A stretch of DNA of 64,000 bases from Guillardia theta CCMP2712 (Eukaryota > Protista > Cryptophyta). Below the pieces are notes generated by a model. The model made no database searches, had not been told where the DNA came from, and saw only the letters and a list, made by a program, of their open reading frames with translations. A program made the translations under genes and the position numbers. The stretch lies in NCBI RefSeq assembly GCF_000315625.1, contig NW_005434645.1, positions 581,033 to 645,032 on the forward strand. The letters are read 5' to 3'. The stretch's first letter is position 1; each line of letters begins with the position of its first letter. Below are positions 6,320 through 49,200 of this stretch, piece after piece.

Positions 6320-6800
6320 TCGGCCTGGTGGCCGCGGGCGGCCGGCGGCCCGGCCAGTCACCGGGCCGTCGCCAGAGGCCCGGGAGTCAGTCCCGCCCCC
6401 GTCCGGGGGCCGGGCTCGGAACTCACTGAGTCAGTCGGAACCGTTCAACGGTTCCGGGGAGTACGCTGGTCACGTTACCCGACTCCGAACCGGGCAGGCC
6501 GCCCCGGCTCCGTTCGGCCGGCCCGGCCCGCGGGATTGCCCGGGCCCGGCCGCGGGCGACCGTCTTAGTACTACCGGCGGTCCTAATCTTCTTTACTCAA
6601 AGTTAAGTGAAAAATCAGTACGAGGACAATCACTGACTGAAGTGTCAGGGTCAAGCCACCTCGACTCTCGGAGGCTCCTCGAGCCGCGGAGCCTCGTGAT
6701 CTTCTTTACTCGTGATCAACGGTACCACGGGTACGCGTGTCGTTCGAGTCTCAGCCTGCACGGGCCGGGCCCGGACTTGAGTGCGGTGCCAACCGTTCAC
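6320..6800. promoter_or_regulatory. GC/CpG-rich, palindrome-dense island in a divergent intergenic region
   Basis: Dense CCGG/GGCC/CCCGGG words with TGAGTCA-like words, lying between the transporter 5' end (-) and the DPH6 5' end (+). Confidence 0.5.
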
Positions 6801-38343: not shown

Positions 38344-39171
38344 ATGCTCGTTGTAGCCCTTGCGCTCCTTCCCTGTGCCATGGCCTTTGCCCCAGCGCCC
38401 CTATCGTCAACCTCTGTCTCAGCTCTCTCAGCTCTCTCTCCGCTCTCTCACAGCCTCTCCTCCCCCATCAGCCGGGGTCATGTTTCCCTCCGCTCCCCAT
38501 CTCGTCGCATGGCTGGGTTGACATGGGGCAAGGTAAAGCTTGCATGCACAGAAGGCAGCGGTGACAAGGAGCTGCAGATGAAGGTGGACAATGCAGCAGA
38601 AGAGAAAGTCCAGGAGACTGTGAAGGAGTTGAAAACAGAGGAGGTCAAGGAGGAGAAAAAGGAGAATCTCATGACCAAGGTCAAGGATGCTGGTGTAGCC
38701 GGACTTGTTGCGTACGCGATCTGGGAATTCATGTAAGTTCTTGTTTGCAAACATTTTCTTGTTCATGTTGGAATGTGTTCATCGGAATTGCTATTGGTTC
38801 TTCTTTTCGGCTGCCAGTTGACATTTTTCCTTAGCTTCTGGGCGATCAGTGTTCCAACAGCTATCTTTGCTTACCATCAAACTACCGGAGAGTGGCCCTC
38901 CTTTGACAACCCTGAGTCAACTGCCAAGGTGACATGACCTAACAGCTCCCACTTTCATATCTTACGCTCCTCCCCAGGTCTCTGCTGTCATCTTCGGCTT
39001 CCTCAACGTGGCTCGTGCGCTTGTTCCTGTTCGCATCGCCATCACTCTAGCTACCGCTCCTTTCGGTGAGTGCTCCCGATGAGGTTCCATGGCATGCGTC
39101 TCCTGACCTCCAACGCAGTTGACAAGTACATTATCAAACCTTTCAACTTGGGAAAGAAGGAGGAGAACTAG
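38344..39171 (+). CDS. Plastid-targeted small membrane protein (DUF1279/FAM210-like)
   Basis: Bipartite leader MLVVALALLPCAMA|FAP plus a Ser-rich transit peptide; KDAGVAGLVAYAIWEF..FWAISVP, ARALVPVRIAITLATAPFVDKYI. Confidence 0.75.
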
Positions 39172-39265: not shown

Positions 39266-42200
39266 TCATTGGACATCGATGTTGTCGAGATGAACTTCAA
39301 TCAGCTTCCCCCCGTCTAGCTCCACAACAACTCGCTCCGGGTCTTGCGACGAGGGAGCCATGAGGTATCCTTGCAGCCCGTTGTAAGAGAACGACTTGAG
39401 TCCTTTGAGCTTCACCCATGCTCTTGTATGAAACCCTGGCATGTTCGGGAGGTCCAACAGCGTCAGCTTGTCCAGGTTGTAGCTCACCGTCTCGCCACCG
39501 CAGCCCTCGTAGACTTCGAAGAGCGTGACCATAACATGCTTCATGAAGCTGTCATCCTCTCGTACAATGATTCCCTTGCGACCATACAGGTCCTCAACGA
39601 CTCTGTGCAGGGCAAACTTCGGTAGAAGGAAGCTGAGATTGTCATATCGTACACTCACTCGGCGATCGCTGTTGTTGAGGTGTATCACAACTCGATCAGG
39701 GTCAACAGGGTCCACGTCCTCAACAGTGCCAGTCAGGTTGTTCATTGATACATCCGCCAGCTTGTTCTTGGCTCCAAGAATCACTCTGCCACCTCGCTCC
39801 CATCCCCTTCTCATCACCACTTCCAGCTTTGCGAAGCGAACAGCTCCAAGCTTTCTGTCACTCTCCCACCTGACCAGAGCCCTGCCGGGATCCGACTCCA
39901 AGGTCCTGATGATGGTGCCTACCTGCTCTTCTCGCGTGCCATTGACTCCTCTAGCTCGCACTCGCATGCCAGGACGGAGCCCGGGAGGAAGCTGATAGTC
40001 GAGGTTGTGGTACCGCACTTCCATGTCTGATCCGTCGGCTAGCTTCACTACCACCCACTCCGGGTCTGACGGATTGGCTTCAACCACTCGAGCGTGCGCG
40101 CCGTTGAAGACGGACGCGTTCTTGAGTTGCCTGATCACCACCATTCGCCCGGGTTCAAGCCCCTCAGGCAGCATGAACTCTATCGCATCTGCCAGCCGCT
40201 CCCTGCTGCACACCAGCTCTTCTCGGTTGTCAAACTTGATTCTAGCCGTGTTTGTATGGTCGTCGTAAACAATCGTCCCTGTCTTCTCCTGCTCTCCGGG
40301 GCCCTGCGCCTTGCTCCTGCAGCGACTGGTCCTTTGGATGGTTTGACGCACGTCCTGCGCCTCGACTATCGCCCTCTTGTTCCACTCCATGCACGCCTTC
40401 CACTCCGCCACTCTCTGCTGCTGCTTCGCTCCCTGCTCCTCTGCCCAGCTCCCTGGAAGGATCTCCGAGGTCCGACGAGGCGCATCCTGCTGTGCTAGGG
40501 CTCTTTCTTGAAGGACGCTTAAGAGTAGCTCATGGAGGGAGAGCGTGTCCGGATGTGAAGGGCCGAGAGTCTTCTCGAAGACTGTCAGCGCCTGCCACAG
40601 CAGGTCCTTGCTCTCCTCCATCTCCCGCCTCGCTACCTTGACCTCTCCTATGCATCGCAACATCTGCGCGGTGCCAAGAGAGTCTTTGCCGGATTTAGAC
40701 ACGTTGTGCTGCAGGACAGACTGGAACTCTTGTAGAGCGAGGTGAAGGAGTGCCTGCGAGTCGGCGGCAGCTTTCCTGGTGGACATGTCGAAGAAGACAG
40801 CTCCCATGTTACGTCTGATCTGTATGATCTCGTCGTGGTGTGCTCCATAGAACATTCTCATGATGTTGAGAGCCAATTTCAGCTTCGAGAGCGCATGCTC
40901 CAAGTTGTCGAGGTGGTGATAGCAGGCCGCCATGCCCACGAGCGCTCTTGCTGTGTTGGGGTGCCGATCCCCGAACCTCTTGAGGGCATGCTTGAAGGCG
41001 TTGCTGAAGGAGAGCAGAGCTTCCATGCACTTGGAGGAGTCCAGCTTCGACCTGCCCTCGTTCATCATGTCGTTGAGAGCATTGTCCTCTGTGACAACAT
41101 ACTGCGAGATCAAGCGCATGCTCTTGTCTCCACTTGACTGTCCGTCAGGCTGCAGTGTGGGAGATGCGATCTCAAGGTTTCGAGTTACGAGATCTAACAG
41201 TTTGCTTCTCTCACCATTGACATTGCTTGGCTCATCCATGAACTCCTTCCACTTGGCGATCTGCTTGAAAATTCCTTCACTAGTCTCTCCCTCTCCATTC
41301 TTCAGACGGGCGATGGCAAGGTTGTTCAACACCTCAATGCAGCTCTCAACGTCGCGATGCTCCTGAAAGATCTTGAGCGCTTCTTGATACTCAAACATCG
41401 ATGACTGGAGCTGCCCGAGAGCTTCATAGTTCATACCCAACAAGTTGTGCAGCATCCCGACTCGCATGTCTTCTTTCCCTAAGTTGTACTCCACGATTCG
41501 CTTCGACTTGTCGAGCCAGTGGATGGAGTCATAGAACAGGCCGCACCTGTACCTGATCAAACCGACGTTGTAGTAGAGCTCGCCCACTGTACTCGCGTCT
41601 CTGGTCTCGTTCTTGGAGTAGAGGTCCAGGCAGTCTTGCAGCAGCCTCTCACACTCGGAGTACTTCTCTTGCTTCAACCTCATACGTGCAAGGCTCAACA
41701 GGATGAGCACCTCCCATGCTGTATCCTCCTGCTGCATTGCTTTGCACCAATGCAGCGACTGATATGCAAACTTGATGGACAACTCTAGAGAGTTCGTCTG
41801 TTGATGGGCGAGAGACATCTGGTATAGCGTGTCCAGGACGATCAAGTTTTCCTCGTGCATCATTCCGTTGAGAAAGGGGCATGAAATATCTGACACTTTA
41901 AAGTGATATTTGCCGCACGGAATCAGAAGCCCGTCGATTCTGATCTCCTTCTCAAGGGCAGTGAGTTTGATCTCCAGGTCATTCATCGTGATCTTGTTGC
42001 GATTTACATGCATCTCCACAAAGCAGCTCTCACTGTTCCAGTCCTTCATGTCGAACGACTCTGATCGAGTGAGGCTGCGGACGATCTCTAGGGTCCGGCT
42101 GTCGAAGCCTAACACGTTCTCGATGCCTTTCTGCAGCTTTTCAATCATGCTCGGGCTGTCAAGCTTCTGCAGGACTTTGGAGTCGAACTTGAGAGTGAGG

Positions 42201-45200
42201 GACAGGAACTTCTTGTCCGCAAACTTGTGTATGAGGGGTTCGAGGAAGTCTAGAGTGAACTGAAGCCTGCAACAGACGTCAGCTCGTCCTCCTCCACGCC
42301 TCTCTGAAACCTGTTGAGAGCCTCAGCGACCCTCCCGCTCCTCAGGAAACAGACGCCTAGGTAGTGCATCACATGCGAGCTTTCCCTCGTCTCCGACGCG
42401 CTGAGGGTCTGCAGCATCCGCAGGCATCGCTCCAGCAGCGCGCAAGCCTCGTCCGCGTCTCCCTTCCGCAGCAGGATCTCAGCTCTCTTGATCTGAGTGT
42501 GGAGAATCACAGGGTTGGACGCGTCCTTGCTGGAGCTCAGGTGGTTCAGCAGCCGCTCCGTCAACCCGAGAGCCTCGCCGTGATCCTGCAACTCCGACGA
42601 CAGATGCTCGGCACACGCCTCGATGACGTCAAGGTCAAACTCTGACGTGTCACTGACTAGCTGGAGCAGGTTTGAGGTCCAGTATCCCCTCTCCGGCTTG
42701 ACCTTAATTCTCCTCCCCTTCCTCTCCATGCAAGCAGCTCCCAGGTGGCTGAGAGCCTTCCGGGCATCCAGCTGGACCTGGGGCAGGAGAACTCGCAGGC
42801 AGTGCAGCACGAGGGGATGAAAGGCGACGGTCTGACGGTCTTGCATGGCAGCGAAGCCATGCTGCACAACGAGGTTCATTCTGCTGCGAGATCGGAGCTC
42901 CGGAGGAATCATGTCCATGTGGATGCGGTAGGGCCCCAGGTGCACACACAAGGCGAGGAAGTCAGGCATGAGCTTGTCCTGCAACTTCATCTCGCTCATG
43001 GCGTACCCAACGTGTGGCAGGAGGAGGTTGACGGCCTTGAGGTCCTGCGCCTCCAGCTCGTACATGTCGGGGGAGACTTGTGCCTCGACGCGCTTGAAGA
43101 GGCTGATCTTCTGAAGGTACCAAGACATGGGCACCCCAAGAATCCTGATACACGAGGACGCCAAGGCGAGGACGAGGGGGATGCGGTCAGCTGCTGAATC
43201 AAGAGCTTGACGTCAGCTGGGTTTTCGTCGCTGGCTTGATGGATGACAAGCTCTCGAGACTCGTCGTCAGTCATGAGGTCGAGGACCAGCAGGTTTTGAG
43301 AGGGAGCTGCTATGTCAAGTGGTCTGGTGGAAGAGACGACGGTGATGCCTGCCTGGCTTTGCGCGGGGATTCGAAACTCGTCAAACAGCCTGCGGTCTTG
43401 CAGGTCGTCCAAGACCACCAGCCATCCGTCGTTGGCCTCCAGCCACATGCGGAACCTCGCGGTCAAAGTTTGAAACGACCCCTTGGCGCCGACATGAATC
43501 TGAAGGTGCTGAGCGATGTCAAGCAGCGAGTGATACGCCTCCTTGTACGTCTTGGCTCGCAACCAAAAGACTGCCTTGACCTTGTTGCGGCGTATGAGCT
43601 CGTAGGAGAGGTGGCTCAGAGCTGAAGTCTTCCCGCAGCCGTCAGGTCCGCTCACCAAGATCAGCGAGTTTGACTGAGTCTGGATGCGAGCGAGGCAGTG
43701 TCTCAGCAAGTCTTGCCGATGCTTCGTCATCGCAGGCACCATCACGCTCCTCGCCACGTGGTGCTGAGATCCGGTGTAAGCCAGGAGCGGCAGCCCGCAC
43801 ATGTAGGGGAGGTTGTAGGCCTGATACAAGGCTGCCAAGTCCTCCTGCCCGTAATCGAGGTCGACGTTCTCAGACTCTTTCATCCAGAAGAAGAACTTGC
43901 TGGAGATGGACCAATGATCTAGATGCACGCTGCTGAAGCTCTCCTTGTTATCAACGCTCATCTTAAGTCTGTGTAGCATGTCCACAAGTTCGATCCCCTG
44001 CATCTCAAGCAAGGAGGAGAACGTCGGCAGGAAACAACATTCTTCTATGTCCTCCGTGGTACATCTCAACAGCAGGGTATTACTTACAGCGACTGAGCTT
44101 GCTTTCAAGTTGGAATATTCAAACTCCCGGGATGCTCCAAACAAGAAGCAGAGGGTTGGAGATGCGAAGAATCCGTTCTTGCTGGCTACTTCTTGCAGCA
44201 GCCATTCCACAGGCAGACAGGAGTCTTGGATGCTGCGGTAGCCTTCAAAGTTCAGCCTGTTGGCGAGCATGCCTTGCAAGTCGCTGTCGTGGGGCACGAG
44301 GAACACAGACTCGTTCACTTTCATCATGTTTCCAACCAAGAGGAGCAAACGAGCTCCTGTATGCTCCGTGTTGAAGTTCAGGTACTCTCGTAGAGCCTGC
44401 TCGCTGTCGTACTTGCTCGGGTTCACAAGCAAGCTTGTCTTCCACATGAGCGCTTCCAGCACTTCACACGCTCTTCTCCCTCTTGACACAAACTCACTCT
44501 CTATCGTGTCGAAAACGACCACCATTGCAGAATTTTTGCGCTGTTGCATTGCATGCTTTTCGACTTCCTTGAGTGGGAATGAAATTCCTTGCAGCATGTG
44601 ACATTCTTCGTTGAGAAACTTGCCCTCAACGAGCTCGAGCAGCTTGCTCAGAGCTGCTAGTGTCAGGCAGGGGCTGCAACTCTTGTCCAGCTGCTGTAGA
44701 CTCTTACCCTCCAAGTCAGAGCACTTGGGCTGACGGACACAGCTTCTATGCAACTCCCATGGCTGTTTCCACTTCCATGCCGAGCCCTTGATCTCACACA
44801 AGGATGAACTTGTCAAGTGCTTCTCCATCCTCGCCATCTTCTCTTGCATGGAGGCAAACTTGGGTATCGCTCCCATCTTGGAGGCCTTCAAGCTCGTCGT
44901 GATGACATGCAGGCACGTGGCAGAGAAGTGCCGTTGAAAGCGATGCCGAGCGAAGGGTTCGTCGAAGAGGAGGTAGATGACGGTGAAAGTGAAGTTATTC
45001 AGGTTCTTGTCTCGGGGCCTGTTTGAGTGCATGATCCACACCTCCATCATCGTCTTGGGCTCTGAGGAGCGAAGCGGCCAAGGAAACTCCACAACCGCGT
45101 AAGTCTGCATGGAGGAAGAGTCGTCGACCAGCAGCTTCTGCAGAAAGTCTCTGCTCTCCGTCTCTCTGTTGGAAGCAAACCCTGCGTTCCAGTGCGCAAG

Positions 45201-45613
45201 CTCCCGAGCGACTCGAACCTGCTCCCAGTCAAGAGCACTCCGCTTCCGCTCGGACCGGAGGTACACATGGAAGCCAACGCTGGGAGGAGCTGAGAGATGT
45301 GCCGATGCTGCCTCGGTGCATCTGCAGCTCGACCTGGAGGAGAGGAGAGTCAGCGGGGGGTCGCGCAGCTGGAAACTCACCTGCGCGAGACGTCTGCTTG
45401 CGTCCCCGTCTCGAACTCAGACCATTGCCCTTCATCCGGCTCTCCTTCTCGCCATGTTCCAGCGAACTTGATCCCCGTGTTGAAGAAGAACGTCCCTTGC
45501 CCGTGCGGGTATCCGTCCTTCCACTCCCCCCTGTAAATCCCTTGCTCGCTGCTCCCTTCCGCCCACCCGCTCCCAGGTCGCCGCTCACGACCCTCCAGCT
45601 TGAAGGTCGACAT
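39266..45613 (-). CDS. NLR-like STAND protein: MORN - TIR-like - pseudo-caspase - NB-ARC - winged helix - TPR - SH3-like repeats; 1-nt frameshift at ~43189
   Basis: MORN YRGEWKDGYPHGQG; Walker A GPDGCGKT; VFWLRA; Walker B WLVVLDDL; GLPL-equivalent RIPLVLALA; FHPLV; kinesin-light-chain-type TPRs (FGDRHPNTA, LGPSHPDT); introns at ~45335-45380 and ~42268-42311. Confidence 0.85.
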
Positions 45614-45859
45614 GCTCGACTGATCAGCGCTGCTCGCACCCCTGTCGTACTATCCGACTGCTCCTGATGACGATGATGATAAGGAGGAGGAGGAGGAGGA
45701 GGAGGAGGAGAATATCATTTCATCATATCAACTACACAAGGTGCGCTACTAGCTCTTCTACTTCAACCACACGTTCAAACCGCCGCCATCCCCGACAGAG
45801 TGATAGGGCCAGTGAGCTAGGGCAGCAACACATGTACCTTTTCCTTCCTCTCTGCCTTG

Positions 45860-46228: not shown

Positions 46229-49200
46229 ATGCCGCATCCTCTTCCTGCCACGAGCCTGCTAAGCTTCCTCTTGGTGATACTCTTGTCACAATGCCAGGGG
46301 AACGCATTGCAAAGTTGCCCAGCCTACCCATGGCCGGCTCATGGCAGGGCCTCACCATCCCGAGTGATGGGGCTAGGAGAGCAGGTCGAGATCACCTGTG
46401 ATGTTGGCTACCAACCAAGCTCTCTCGACCTCGTGACTCCCGCATGCCTAGGGTTCGATCCAGCCGTGAACGTGTCCAACCTTACAACAGCGGAAGCCCT
46501 GGGGTATTCCCCGGGGAGCTTGTGCATGCCCATAAGTTGCGGTCGCTTCCTTCCCCCAGCAAACTCAGAAGTGACGCCGACGGGAGAGGTGTTCTTCAAC
46601 CAGACCGTCAAGGTGGCTTGCTTGCCGGGGTTCACAGCCTCGGGAGTTTTCGGGTCTTCGGACTCTCCTAGATGTCAACCCGACGGGTCCTTCACTCTCG
46701 CCATCACCTGCCAGCGAGTTCCGTTGCAATGCGCCAACGCGTTTGACACCCGCGAGCTCTCGAGCGCGAGGCTGGGGAGCTTTCGCAGGGAGACGTGCCA
46801 TCCGAGCGCGGAGTATTGCGTGTCTGCCTTCTCGCAGGTGTCAGGATACTTCTGGTACGGCTGTGGACCTCCGATCGTAGAGGTTGCTGCAGCTATCATC
46901 CCTGTGCCTGACTGGGAGAACTTGGTCACTGCAGCCGACGGCATGCTCGGTCGAAAGTCCCCCTCCTGGCTCTCCTCGCACTTCATCTGTACGGGGACAA
47001 AACTGGAAGGAGAAGTTTACATCGAGTCCAGCGAGTTTGGGGGAGGCAACTGGACGTTCAGCTGCTGCTGCTCTCAGATGTGCAACCTCGGATTCAGGTG
47101 CGCTCAAGCTCCCTTGGGTCAGCCGCTCTCCTCCGAGTCCAGCGTCTTGACGGCTTCTGCTGAATGCAAGCAGAGTACTGGATGCTACCAGTCGAAGCCC
47201 TTTCCCAGCAGCCAGTGGAGGTATGACCCTCTCACCAACCAGCTGCTCCAGACCTACAGCCCAGAACTGGTGGGTCTCATCGATTTCAACACGACCTCCA
47301 AGCGCCCTCCTGGGTACGGCGAGGACGTGATCGGTTATGCTGCCCTCATGCGAGGGGCGGCGGACTCGTGGGTGGCTGCTGACGCTCCTGTGCTGTTTGT
47401 TGACACTTCCCGCGTGTTCCCGTACGCGGCCAAGCTGAAGGCCTGGGAGATCGTGGCGGATGCTCCTTGCCAACTGATGGTGCAAGTGTGGAGGAAGACC
47501 GGCAACGCCGACGAGTTTATGCTAGTTTCCAGCTCATCTGTCCAAGTGACGAGCAACTACGGCAGTCCAGCTCTGTTCCTGCTGCCAGAAGGGGAGCAGA
47601 CGGAAGTGGCCAAGGGAGACGTGATAGGTTGGGGGCACACAGGTCCTGGTCACCTGGTCTACGACGGCGACTCGTTGCAAGCTCAGTCGATCAAGTTTGT
47701 CTACGGAAGTTCAACGATCGGCGCCTCCCGTATCTTCATTTTCTCTGCCAGCAGGCGCTACTCGATCCGCGCCTTCTTCGACCCCACCCCGCTGGCTGAC
47801 AGCTGGATTGTTTCCGCCCCTCAGCCCAATGGGAGTGGCTGCTACGACTGGTCGCTTTCGCGCTACGGCCTCCACTGCAGCCAAGGCAGCATGAACATTC
47901 CCGTGGTCAACCTGAGCGACGGCAGCAGAGAAGTCTCTGAGGTTGGACTCCAGCTCTTCGTGGTCGGCTCTAGCGTGTTCGAGTACACCTGCTGCAAGAG
48001 CAGCATGTGCAACCAGCTGCCGTGCGTCAGGGCCGGCAGGTCTTGCGGCCTCTACCCGCGAACCAGCAACGCCATCGTCACTCCCAACTCTTCCATCGTC
48101 GTTCCCCTCCAGCACGTGAACATCTCCTGCGTCGTCGGGTACTCGCTTTCCGGAGAACCTTTCCGGAAAGTAGACCCGCAGTGCCTCAAGGACGGCAGCT
48201 TCGAGTCAGGCGAGGTCGGCTCCTCGTTCTGAAAGTGCTGCTGCTTCTGCTGCTCATCCGCTCTCCTTGCTCCTTTCTGCTGCTGCTGCTCTTCCCCCTC
48301 CCCCTCCCCCCTTCCCCCCCTCCGCTTCTTCTTCCTCTTTCATGCTGCTCCTTTCTCGTTGTTCCTGCTGCTGCTGCCTCGTTTTCCACTTCCTCCTTCC
48401 TGCTCCTGCTCCTTTTCATCCTTTCCGTTCACGCCCCCTTCATTTCTTCTTTTTCTCCCTGCCACCGCCACCCTCCACCTCCTTTCCGTCCCTCGCTCGA
48501 TTCTCTTCATCTGATCGCTCCTGCTCTCCCTTACCTTCTCCTCCGCACTGACGCGGCCCCAGGTCTGTCTTCCTGTTTCCTGCGGGAGGTATTCTCCTCC
48601 TCCCAACGGCAGAGTCTGGCCCCTCCGCCCCATCCTCTACGGGGAGAACGTCACAATTTCTTGCGTCCAGGGCTACGAGCTTGTGGGAGGAGGAGCTGTA
48701 AACCCTCGGTGCACAGCAAGCGGCAAATTCGAGGAGGGGAAGGTAAGGGGCGACGCTGCAGTCTTGGTCCTGACTTTCTCCTAGTTCTGCTCCTTGCAGA
48801 ACGGGGGGGCGATCGTAGGAGTGTCGATCGCGTTCTTCCTCCTCGTCCTGCTTGCCGGCTTCCTCCTCCTCTTCACGTGCAGGAGGCTTCTCAGTTCCGT
48901 GCGCTCATGGGAGAGGAGAGCTCGAGTCATTGGTAGGATGATGAGACGTTTGCTTGCAGAGCTGACTTTGTTGACAGATCCTGAGGAGGTAAATTCGAGA
49001 GAGGAGGAGGAAAGGCAGGAAGAGGCCGAGGAGGAGCAAAAGGAGGCGGAGGCGGAGGGGGCATACAATGACTGTTCGAGAGCAACCGGGAGGAGAAGGA
49101 GGTGGTGGGGAAAGGAGGAGGAGCAGAAGGAGGAGGGGGGCTGAGAGCACTACAATCTCATGATGCTGGGCAGGTGACGGATGGATCAGCGGAGAAGAAG

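What the first reader, a model, noticed from the sequence alone, without database searches (positions are those of the whole stretch)
39266..45613. Candidate algal NLR-like immune receptor: MORN-TIR-like-pseudocaspase-NB-ARC-TPR-SH3 array
Seen: one gene of about 2000 aa, with few introns in an intron-rich genome, carrying a full STAND motif series (Walker A GPDGCGKT, VFW, Walker B LVVLDD, SST-R sensor, IPLVL, FHPLV). Two effector-like domains precede it, and TPRs plus beta-barrel repeats follow it. Established: effector-STAND-TPR is the design of fungal NLRs and bacterial Avs antiviral proteins, with TIR and caspase as typical effectors. Inference: a pattern-recognition or cell-death receptor, perhaps against viruses, in a lineage where I know of no characterised NLR system. 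I do not recognise this domain combination. The MORN repeats suggest membrane anchoring.
Basis: partly seen in the sequence, partly recalled or inferred. Interest (0 to 1): 0.9.

Follow-up and report, generated by a model that had tools for sequence, protein, structure and literature searches.

The report
Cryptophyte STAND switch with dead caspase
A real, spliced, single-copy gene of the alga Guillardia theta, conserved in other cryptophytes, joins an NLR/Apaf-1-type molecular switch to a catalytically dead caspase-fold domain; the proposed TIR domain is not supported, and the gene's steady conservation fits a fixed signalling scaffold better than a fast-evolving immune receptor.

Summary
The gene is real: one minus-strand, 3-exon, 2,085-codon gene (G. 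theta GUITHDRAFT_138112). RNA-derived contigs show two GT-AG introns and one base missing from the assembly, so the third 'intron' is an assembly error. Confirmed domains: about two MORN repeats, a caspase-fold domain lacking the catalytic Cys (His also lost in most), an NB-ARC STAND module, TPRs with an inserted domain, and six KOW-like (SH3-fold) barrels. The 'TIR-like' domain is not supported (profile probability 0.7%, no TIR in fold searches); it is a conserved alpha+beta domain with no database match. The layout is conserved in Teleaulax, Rhodomonas (partial) and metagenomic relatives; the gene is single-copy, with dN/dS about 0.2 in every domain including the TPRs and no repeat-number change among close relatives, unlike diversifying fungal and brown-algal NLRs. 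Best reading: an Apaf-1/TNP-like conserved switch whose dead caspase acts as a scaffold, possibly for the genome's intact-looking caspases of the same type. Immune function is untested and not favoured. I found no paper on this architecture. The scan has noted many other caspase and STAND fusions elsewhere in this genome, but none with this layout among the notes I saw.

The parts
45381..45613 (-). Exon 1 (start codon 45613)
   Evidence: RNA contig joint; mapping of P0001
45416..45568 (-). About two MORN repeats (beta-hairpin sheet)
   Evidence: Pfam MORN E 2e-4, below gathering; model pLDDT 73-85 and VIA Z 6-7 to MORN proteins; also present in 6 related loci and the Rhodomonas protein
45334..45380 (-). 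Intron 1, 47 nt, GT-AG
42311..45333 (-). Exon 2; the assembly lacks one base after 43190
   Evidence: insertion in contigs of runs X1, X2 and X4
44622..45284 (-). Domain X: conserved alpha+beta domain with a four-strand meander and a Cys-rich tail; not supported as TIR; no match found
43884..44552 (-). Pseudocaspase, bacterial/paracaspase-type C14 fold; His site is Asn (44328-44330), Cys site is Ser (44130-44132)
   Evidence: hhalign 98%; Foldseek and VIA Z 13 to cFLIP-L, caspase-9, MALT1; site table
42793..43724 (-). NB-ARC STAND module (NBD, HD1, winged helix); Walker A 43626-43649, Walker B 43404-43421, MHD-like motif 42808-42822
   Evidence: plant NLR 8yl6, Apaf-1 3shf; FxSxx_TPR E 1e-27, below cut-off
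43190..43191 (-). Assembly error (one base missing) just before the GLPL-like motif; the database gene model bridges it with a false 29-nt intron
42260..42645 (-). First TPR block (spans intron 2)
   Evidence: Pfam TPR_12
42267..42310 (-). Intron 2, 44 nt, GT-AG
39266..42266 (-). Exon 3 (to stop codon)
41879..42229 (-). Alpha/beta domain inserted in the TPR array (two copies in Teleaulax-type orthologs); SEA/ferredoxin-like by eye only, no database match
40484..41851 (-). Main TPR array (TPR_12/TPR_10 type), repeats not similar to each other
39269..40333 (-). Six KOW-like (SH3-fold) beta-barrel repeats of about 60 aa
   Evidence: (GPKOW E 2e-4)

Best explanation
A conserved, single-copy NB-ARC-type switch that works as a signalling scaffold, closer in logic to Apaf-1/CED-4 or plant TNPs than to a diversified receptor. 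Shown: the domain order, intact nucleotide-binding motifs, a caspase fold without catalytic Cys, transcription, and long-term conservation. Inferred from the STAND family: the TPR array holds the NB-ARC closed; binding of a constant ligand (TPRs, insert or KOW barrels) allows ADP/ATP exchange and oligomerisation, which clusters the N-terminal domains. Inferred, weaker: the clustered dead caspase binds and activates or restrains catalytically intact caspase-like proteases, as cFLIP does with caspase-8; the nearest relatives among the genome's caspase loci I examined are intact-looking caspases, at least two of them next to a kinase domain. MORN repeats and domain X would add further protein contacts or localisation. 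The likely output is stress or cell-death signalling; whether infection is the trigger is open.
For: One spliced transcript. NB-ARC above Pfam gathering, profile hits to a plant NLR and Apaf-1; Walker A Lys kept in 11 of 11 homologous sequences, second Walker B Asp in 10 of 11. Caspase fold Z 13, Cys absent in 12 of 12, yet the domain is under purifying selection (dN/dS 0.13-0.18), so it has a non-catalytic job. Closest own-genome caspases L003-L006 (E 1e-16 to 1e-12; hhalign 97.9%) keep His and Cys; kinase ORFs lie just upstream in L004 and L005. Single copy; dN/dS about 0.2 throughout.
Against: No interaction, oligomerisation or phenotype data. Sequence kinship between the dead and live caspases shows ancestry, not partnership, and only 15 of at least 28 caspase loci were compared. 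One ortholog group has weakened Walker A/B residues and several lack the sensor-1 Arg, so switching may be degenerate in some lineages. The NB-ARC itself was not folded here. Caspase folds also serve as plain docking domains (Raptor, seen).
Confidence: 0.45

Rival explanations
1. Non-immune, non-death scaffold, for example a flagellar or trafficking protein in the manner of the animal STAND-TPR protein NPHP3; the dead caspase is only a docking surface as in Raptor.
For: Single copy and uniform purifying selection; no catalytic effector; MORN structural neighbours include many ciliary proteins; weak TPR_NPHP3 matches; the genome holds other STAND proteins wired to C2 signalling domains; flanking genes are not defence-like.
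Against: The NTPase is NB-ARC/FxSxx-TPR type, not the NPHP3 NACHT type; TPR_NPHP3 scores are far below cut-off; MORN hits to ciliary proteins reflect what is in the PDB; caspase plus STAND fusions are otherwise linked to cell death (PMC3501461).
Confidence: 0.28
2. One reading: a pattern-recognition receptor against viruses, like bacterial Avs or fungal NLRs, whose TPRs bind a pathogen protein and trigger cell death.
For: Effector-like/STAND/TPR layout; nearest NB-ARC relatives are bacterial-type NB-ARC-TPR proteins, 25 of which match a TIR/SEFIR-type profile; a receptor for an invariant viral fold need not diversify; contig depth differs widely between RNA runs.
Against: TIR not supported; no active effector; no Avs model matches; no paralogs, no internally conserved TPRs, no repeat-number change, TPR dN/dS 0.09-0.27, against the fungal NLR pattern (PMC4986451). 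Other families in this genome, LRR-Roc-COR-TIR and tandem caspase/ART/ankyrin loci, are the multi-copy ones.
Confidence: 0.22
3. Pseudogene or several separate ORFs.
For: The genome sequence has a frameshift after 43190; only 6 raw reads in the one raw-read run.
Against: Contigs from three studies restore the frame and carry both splice joints; orthologs are open over more than 2,100 codons with dN/dS about 0.2.
Confidence: 0.02

Closest known systems
Plant TNP proteins (TIR-NB-ARC-TPR; PMC9806590)
   Same: NB-ARC with the same motif series followed by TPRs; conserved, low copy; related to bacterial and fungal NB-ARC-TPR proteins.
   Different: No TIR NADase here; instead MORN, an unmatched domain and a dead caspase in front, an inserted domain in the TPRs and six KOW-like barrels behind.
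Fungal and brown-algal NB-ARC-TPR NLR candidates (PMC4986451; Teng et al. 2023 as cited in PMC11378527)
   Same: Effector-position domain, NB-ARC, TPR_10/TPR_12-type array.
   Different: Those are expanded families; the fungal ones show internally conserved, number-variable, positively selected repeats and the brown-algal ones exon shuffling. This gene is single-copy and uniformly conserved.
Apaf-1/CED-4 apoptosome with caspase-9, and cFLIP (own knowledge; structural hits)
   Same: Single-copy NB-ARC switch; caspase fold; cFLIP is likewise a dead caspase.
   Different: Here the caspase fold is fused to the switch and is dead; no CARD or DED; TPR instead of WD40; the caspase is of the bacterial/paracaspase type.
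Bacterial caspase-STAND fusions (metacaspase-NACHT-WD40, metacaspase-NB-ARC; PMC3501461) and FxSxx-system NB-ARC-TPR proteins
   Same: Caspase domain directly before a STAND NTPase; the NB-ARC is of the FxSxx_TPR type; dyad-less caspases are common in some bacterial phyla.
   Different: None of the ~140 nearest NB-ARC hits carries a caspase domain; no relative of the N-terminal region in GTDB or viral contigs; MORN and KOW additions.
Bacterial Avs antiviral STAND proteins
   Same: STAND plus TPR layout.
   Different: No PADLOC Avs model matches; no nuclease, protease or TIR activity evident.

Membership tests
STAND NTPase, NB-ARC (AP-ATPase) clade | NB-ARC profile match | tested here: met
   Pfam PF00931 27 bits vs cut-off 23.5 on the exon; ortholog profile hits plant NLR 8yl6 (E 2e-4) and Apaf-1 3shf (E 5e-4)
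STAND NTPase, NB-ARC (AP-ATPase) clade | Walker A, RNBS-A, Walker B, sensor-1, GLPL-like and MHD-like motifs in order | tested here: met
   some orthologs show weakened Walker A/B or no sensor-1 Arg
STAND NTPase, NB-ARC (AP-ATPase) clade | NBD-HD1-winged-helix three-dimensional fold | not tested
STAND NTPase, NB-ARC (AP-ATPase) clade | Nucleotide-dependent oligomerisation | not testable with these tools
   needs biochemistry
TIR domain | Profile similarity to TIR domains | tested here: not met
   hhalign vs TIR alignment probability 0.7%; no Pfam hit at E<10; TIR profile finds 25 other proteins but no family member
TIR domain | Flavodoxin-like fold of alternating strands and helices | tested here: not met
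   both models give four consecutive strands; no TIR among listed fold hits, best Z 4.5; model confidence is modest (mean pLDDT 53, core about 70)
Caspase-hemoglobinase fold, C14 | Fold and profile | tested here: met
   hhalign 98%; VIA Z 13.1, rmsd 3.0 over 183 residues to cFLIP-L, tied with caspase-9 and others
Active C14 protease | His-Cys catalytic dyad | tested here: not met
   Cys absent in 12 of 12 sequences; His kept only in the P0152/P0002 group
Diversifying fungal/brown-algal NLR-type receptors | Expanded paralog family | tested here: not met
   single copy in the genome; the search scores only the best candidates
Diversifying fungal/brown-algal NLR-type receptors | Internally conserved, number-variable, positively selected repeats | tested here: not met
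   no TPR self-similarity; 0-1 gaps among near relatives and TPR dN/dS 0.09-0.27 (measured on the P0157 group, domain-wide; site-level selection not tested)
Avs antiviral STAND | Match to Avs models and a catalytic effector | tested here: not met
   PADLOC gives only generic TPR and P-loop hits
NLR immune receptor (functional sense) | Senses non-self and triggers defence or death | not testable with these tools
   no infection data available here
MORN repeat | Repeat profile and beta-hairpin fold | tested here: met
   Pfam E 2e-4, 21.2 bits, just below the 22.5 cut-off; fold hits Z 6-7
KOW/SH3-fold barrels | Repeat profile match to KOW proteins | tested here: inconclusive
   GPKOW E 2e-4; weak KOW6_SPT5, DUF4314, Cul7 hits; not folded; no canonical SH3 hit

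The most novel reading that the evidence does not exclude
A one-chain apoptosome regulator of cryptophyte algae: an NB-ARC switch that carries its own cFLIP-like dead caspase and, on activation, recruits the genome's intact bacterial-type caspases to start a death or defence programme, with a previously undescribed domain (X) as a second output.
Probability: 0.2. Interest if true: 0.8.

Novelty: new variant of a known kind. Interest (0 to 1): 0.48.

Why it matters
How unicellular algae switch on caspase-like proteases is unresolved. A conserved, expressed STAND switch fused to a dead caspase is a concrete candidate for an upstream regulator in cryptophytes and can be tested biochemically. It also shows that an NLR-like layout in an alga need not mean a diversifying immune receptor. 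Domain X is a conserved ~220-aa domain with no match in the libraries searched. Practically, the public gene model (EKX46768) is wrong at the GLPL-like motif because of an assembly error.

Tried and rejected
TIR for domain X: rejected by profile, Pfam, Atlas features and three fold searches. Third intron or pseudogene at 43190: rejected by RNA contigs. Paralog family: none (14, 55, 56; PF00931 finds nothing genome-wide at E<=0.001 in this search). Recent horizontal transfer: GC3 0.70-0.81, at the upper end of neighbours' 0.59-0.76; no close relative in GTDB or IMG/VR (114, 115); the NB tree puts cryptophytes in one clade (SH-aLRT 96) on a long stem with no resolved sister (96, quick tree only, taxonomy of most rows unknown), so an ancient bacterial origin is neither shown nor excluded. 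Word-based homolog searches with P0001 or A1 found nothing new. PDB sequence-profile searches for the pseudocaspase, domain X and the insert gave nothing significant. Literature searches found no description of this gene or layout; the library misses most subscription papers. The corrected spliced protein was not sent to any tool: exons were searched by reference and whole-protein scans used the database model P0001, which has a wrong stretch of about 8 residues in place of 18.

Full report
Identity and gene model. The genome has 87.1 Mb in 669 contigs, and the protein database names the product as Guillardia theta GUITHDRAFT_138112, EKX46768 (P0001, 2,075 aa). The window shows four open frames on the minus strand. 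Contigs of three runs from three studies, whose RNA nature is guessed by the tool but shown by their splice joints, skip 45380-45334 and 42310-42267 (both GT-AG) and all carry one extra base after 43190. In X1 and X2 a single contig covers the laid stretch 39720-45700; at 6,406 and 7,029 nt they are long enough to reach the stop at 39266, which I could not lay because of the 6,000-letter limit. With the extra base the CDS is 6,258 nt, 2,085 aa. So there are three exons, and the apparent break before the GLPL-like motif is an assembly error that the public model bridges with a false 29-nt intron. The one raw-read run gave only 6 reads, so expression level is not established.

Confirmed domains. 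The NB-ARC passes the Pfam cut-off on its exon. A profile of homologs hits a plant NLR and Apaf-1, and the best bacterial family is FxSxx_TPR, well below its cut-off. The Walker A lysine is kept in all 11 sequences that cover it and the second Walker B aspartate in 10; one group has weakened Walker A and B residues and several lack the sensor-1 arginine. Residues about 339-561 have the caspase fold: hhalign 98% against the genome's own C14 domains, Foldseek E 1e-4, VIA Z about 13 to cFLIP-L, caspase-9 and MALT1, all tied. The catalytic Cys is missing in all 12 sequences and the His in all but one group. About two MORN repeats open the protein. TPRs are strong and are interrupted by a ~115-aa alpha/beta insert with no database match, present twice in Teleaulax-type orthologs. 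The tail has six ~60-aa barrels whose best match is the KOW protein GPKOW.

The TIR call is not supported. The region between MORN and caspase is conserved, but it gives 0.7% probability against a TIR alignment, where the caspase test gave 98%. A TIR profile finds 25 bacterial-type hits but no member of this family. Two models show four consecutive strands rather than alternating strands and helices, and fold searches list no TIR and nothing above Z 4.5. The model is of modest confidence (mean pLDDT 53), so I call this domain X, unmatched, and do not claim a new fold.

Conservation. Relatives sharing the N-terminal region are few: Teleaulax amphioxeia (P0190), Rhodomonas salina (P0170 cluster, partial transcript) and unnamed metagenomic sequences that group with them. 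Full-length ones keep the order from domain X to the KOW barrels, and a MORN segment lies upstream in all six loci checked. Identity to G. theta is 18-35% per domain outside the MORN repeats. The NB domains form one clade (SH-aLRT 96) on a long stem with an unresolved sister (quick tree). Nothing related was found in GTDB genomes or viral contigs by a search that reaches close relatives only. In G. theta the gene is single-copy. Between relatives of P0157 at dS 0.1 and 0.5, dN/dS is 0.22 and 0.19 overall, 0.09-0.27 in the TPR blocks and 0.13-0.18 in the pseudocaspase; near-identical alleles differ by at most one gap. The TPRs are not similar to each other. TPR and insert numbers do differ between distant lineages.

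Genome context. Other genes in the window are an amino-acid transporter, an ankyrin protein, an FKBP, a Sushi-domain protein, an anoctamin, a nucleotide cyclase and an RCC1 protein; this is not a defence cluster. The genome does hold multi-copy immune-looking families: at least 28 C14 loci, some in tandem with ART and ankyrin ORFs, and 17 TIR loci, the two checked being Roc/COR-TIR. It also holds other STAND proteins with C2 domains. Of the 15 caspase loci examined, the pseudocaspase is closest to L003-L006 (E 1e-16 to 1e-12), which keep His and Cys; L004 and L005 have a kinase ORF just upstream.

Mechanism. Shown: an expressed, conserved NB-ARC-TPR protein with a dead but conserved caspase domain. 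From STAND biology: ligand binding at the C-terminal repeats should release the NB-ARC, allow nucleotide exchange and oligomerisation, and cluster the N-terminal domains. Inferred: since no catalytic effector is evident, the output is recruitment, most simply of intact caspases of the same type, in the way cFLIP pairs with caspase-8 (confidence 0.45 for the switch-and-scaffold model as a whole; the specific partner is weaker). Rivals are a non-death scaffold such as a flagellar NPHP3-like protein (0.28) and an antiviral receptor for an invariant ligand (0.22). Membrane anchoring by MORN repeats is not supported by current structural work (PMC7725318).

Comparison and novelty. NB-ARC-TPR proteins are known in plants (TNPs, PMC9806590), fungi (PMC4986451) and brown algae (cited in PMC11378527), and caspase-STAND fusions in bacteria (PMC3501461). 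It works like those switches and belongs to the NB-ARC clade by sequence; it fails the tests for TIR, for an active caspase, for Avs and for a diversifying NLR family. The combination MORN, X, pseudocaspase, NB-ARC, TPR with insert, six KOW-like barrels was in no paper I could search. Verdict: new variant of a known kind, interest 0.48. Earlier scan notes on this genome list many other caspase and STAND fusions; they are unchecked and were used only as context.

Noticed in passing
G000 C150, C149, C23, C92, C184, C221, C228, C33, C72, C19 (L036-L045, L049, L052): A dispersed family of near-identical ~1,300-aa ORFs ending in a TIR domain; the two checked are COR-TIR and LRR-Roc-COR-TIR. A better candidate for an expanded immune family than the gene studied here.
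   Followed up: partly
G000 C97:156000-232000 (L014, L016, L055): Tandem array of at least seven caspase-like ORFs with intact-looking dyad; one unit is followed by ART and ankyrin ORFs.
   Followed up: partly
L003, L004, L005 (C308, C118, C6) and L006 (C266): Three near-identical caspase loci, two shown to have a kinase ORF just upstream, plus one related locus; His and Cys intact; closest relatives of the pseudocaspase among those examined.
   Followed up: partly
L053:1773-8138 (C87): 2,122-aa ORF with five C2 domains, DUF4062, NACHT and NPHP3-type TPRs.
   Followed up: partly
window 42808: One C>G difference in the contig of run X2, a possible strain variant.
   Followed up: no
window 46229-48232 (+): Neighbouring secreted or membrane protein with Sushi repeats and cysteine-rich modules.
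   Followed up: partly
window 38344-39170 (+): Small multi-intron gene ending about 95 bases from this gene's stop, convergent; the X2 contig (7,029 nt) is long enough to overlap it.
   Followed up: no
P0152/P0002 (L026): This ortholog group keeps the caspase His but has weakened Walker A and B residues and a shorter TPR region; possible divergence in mechanism.
   Followed up: partly
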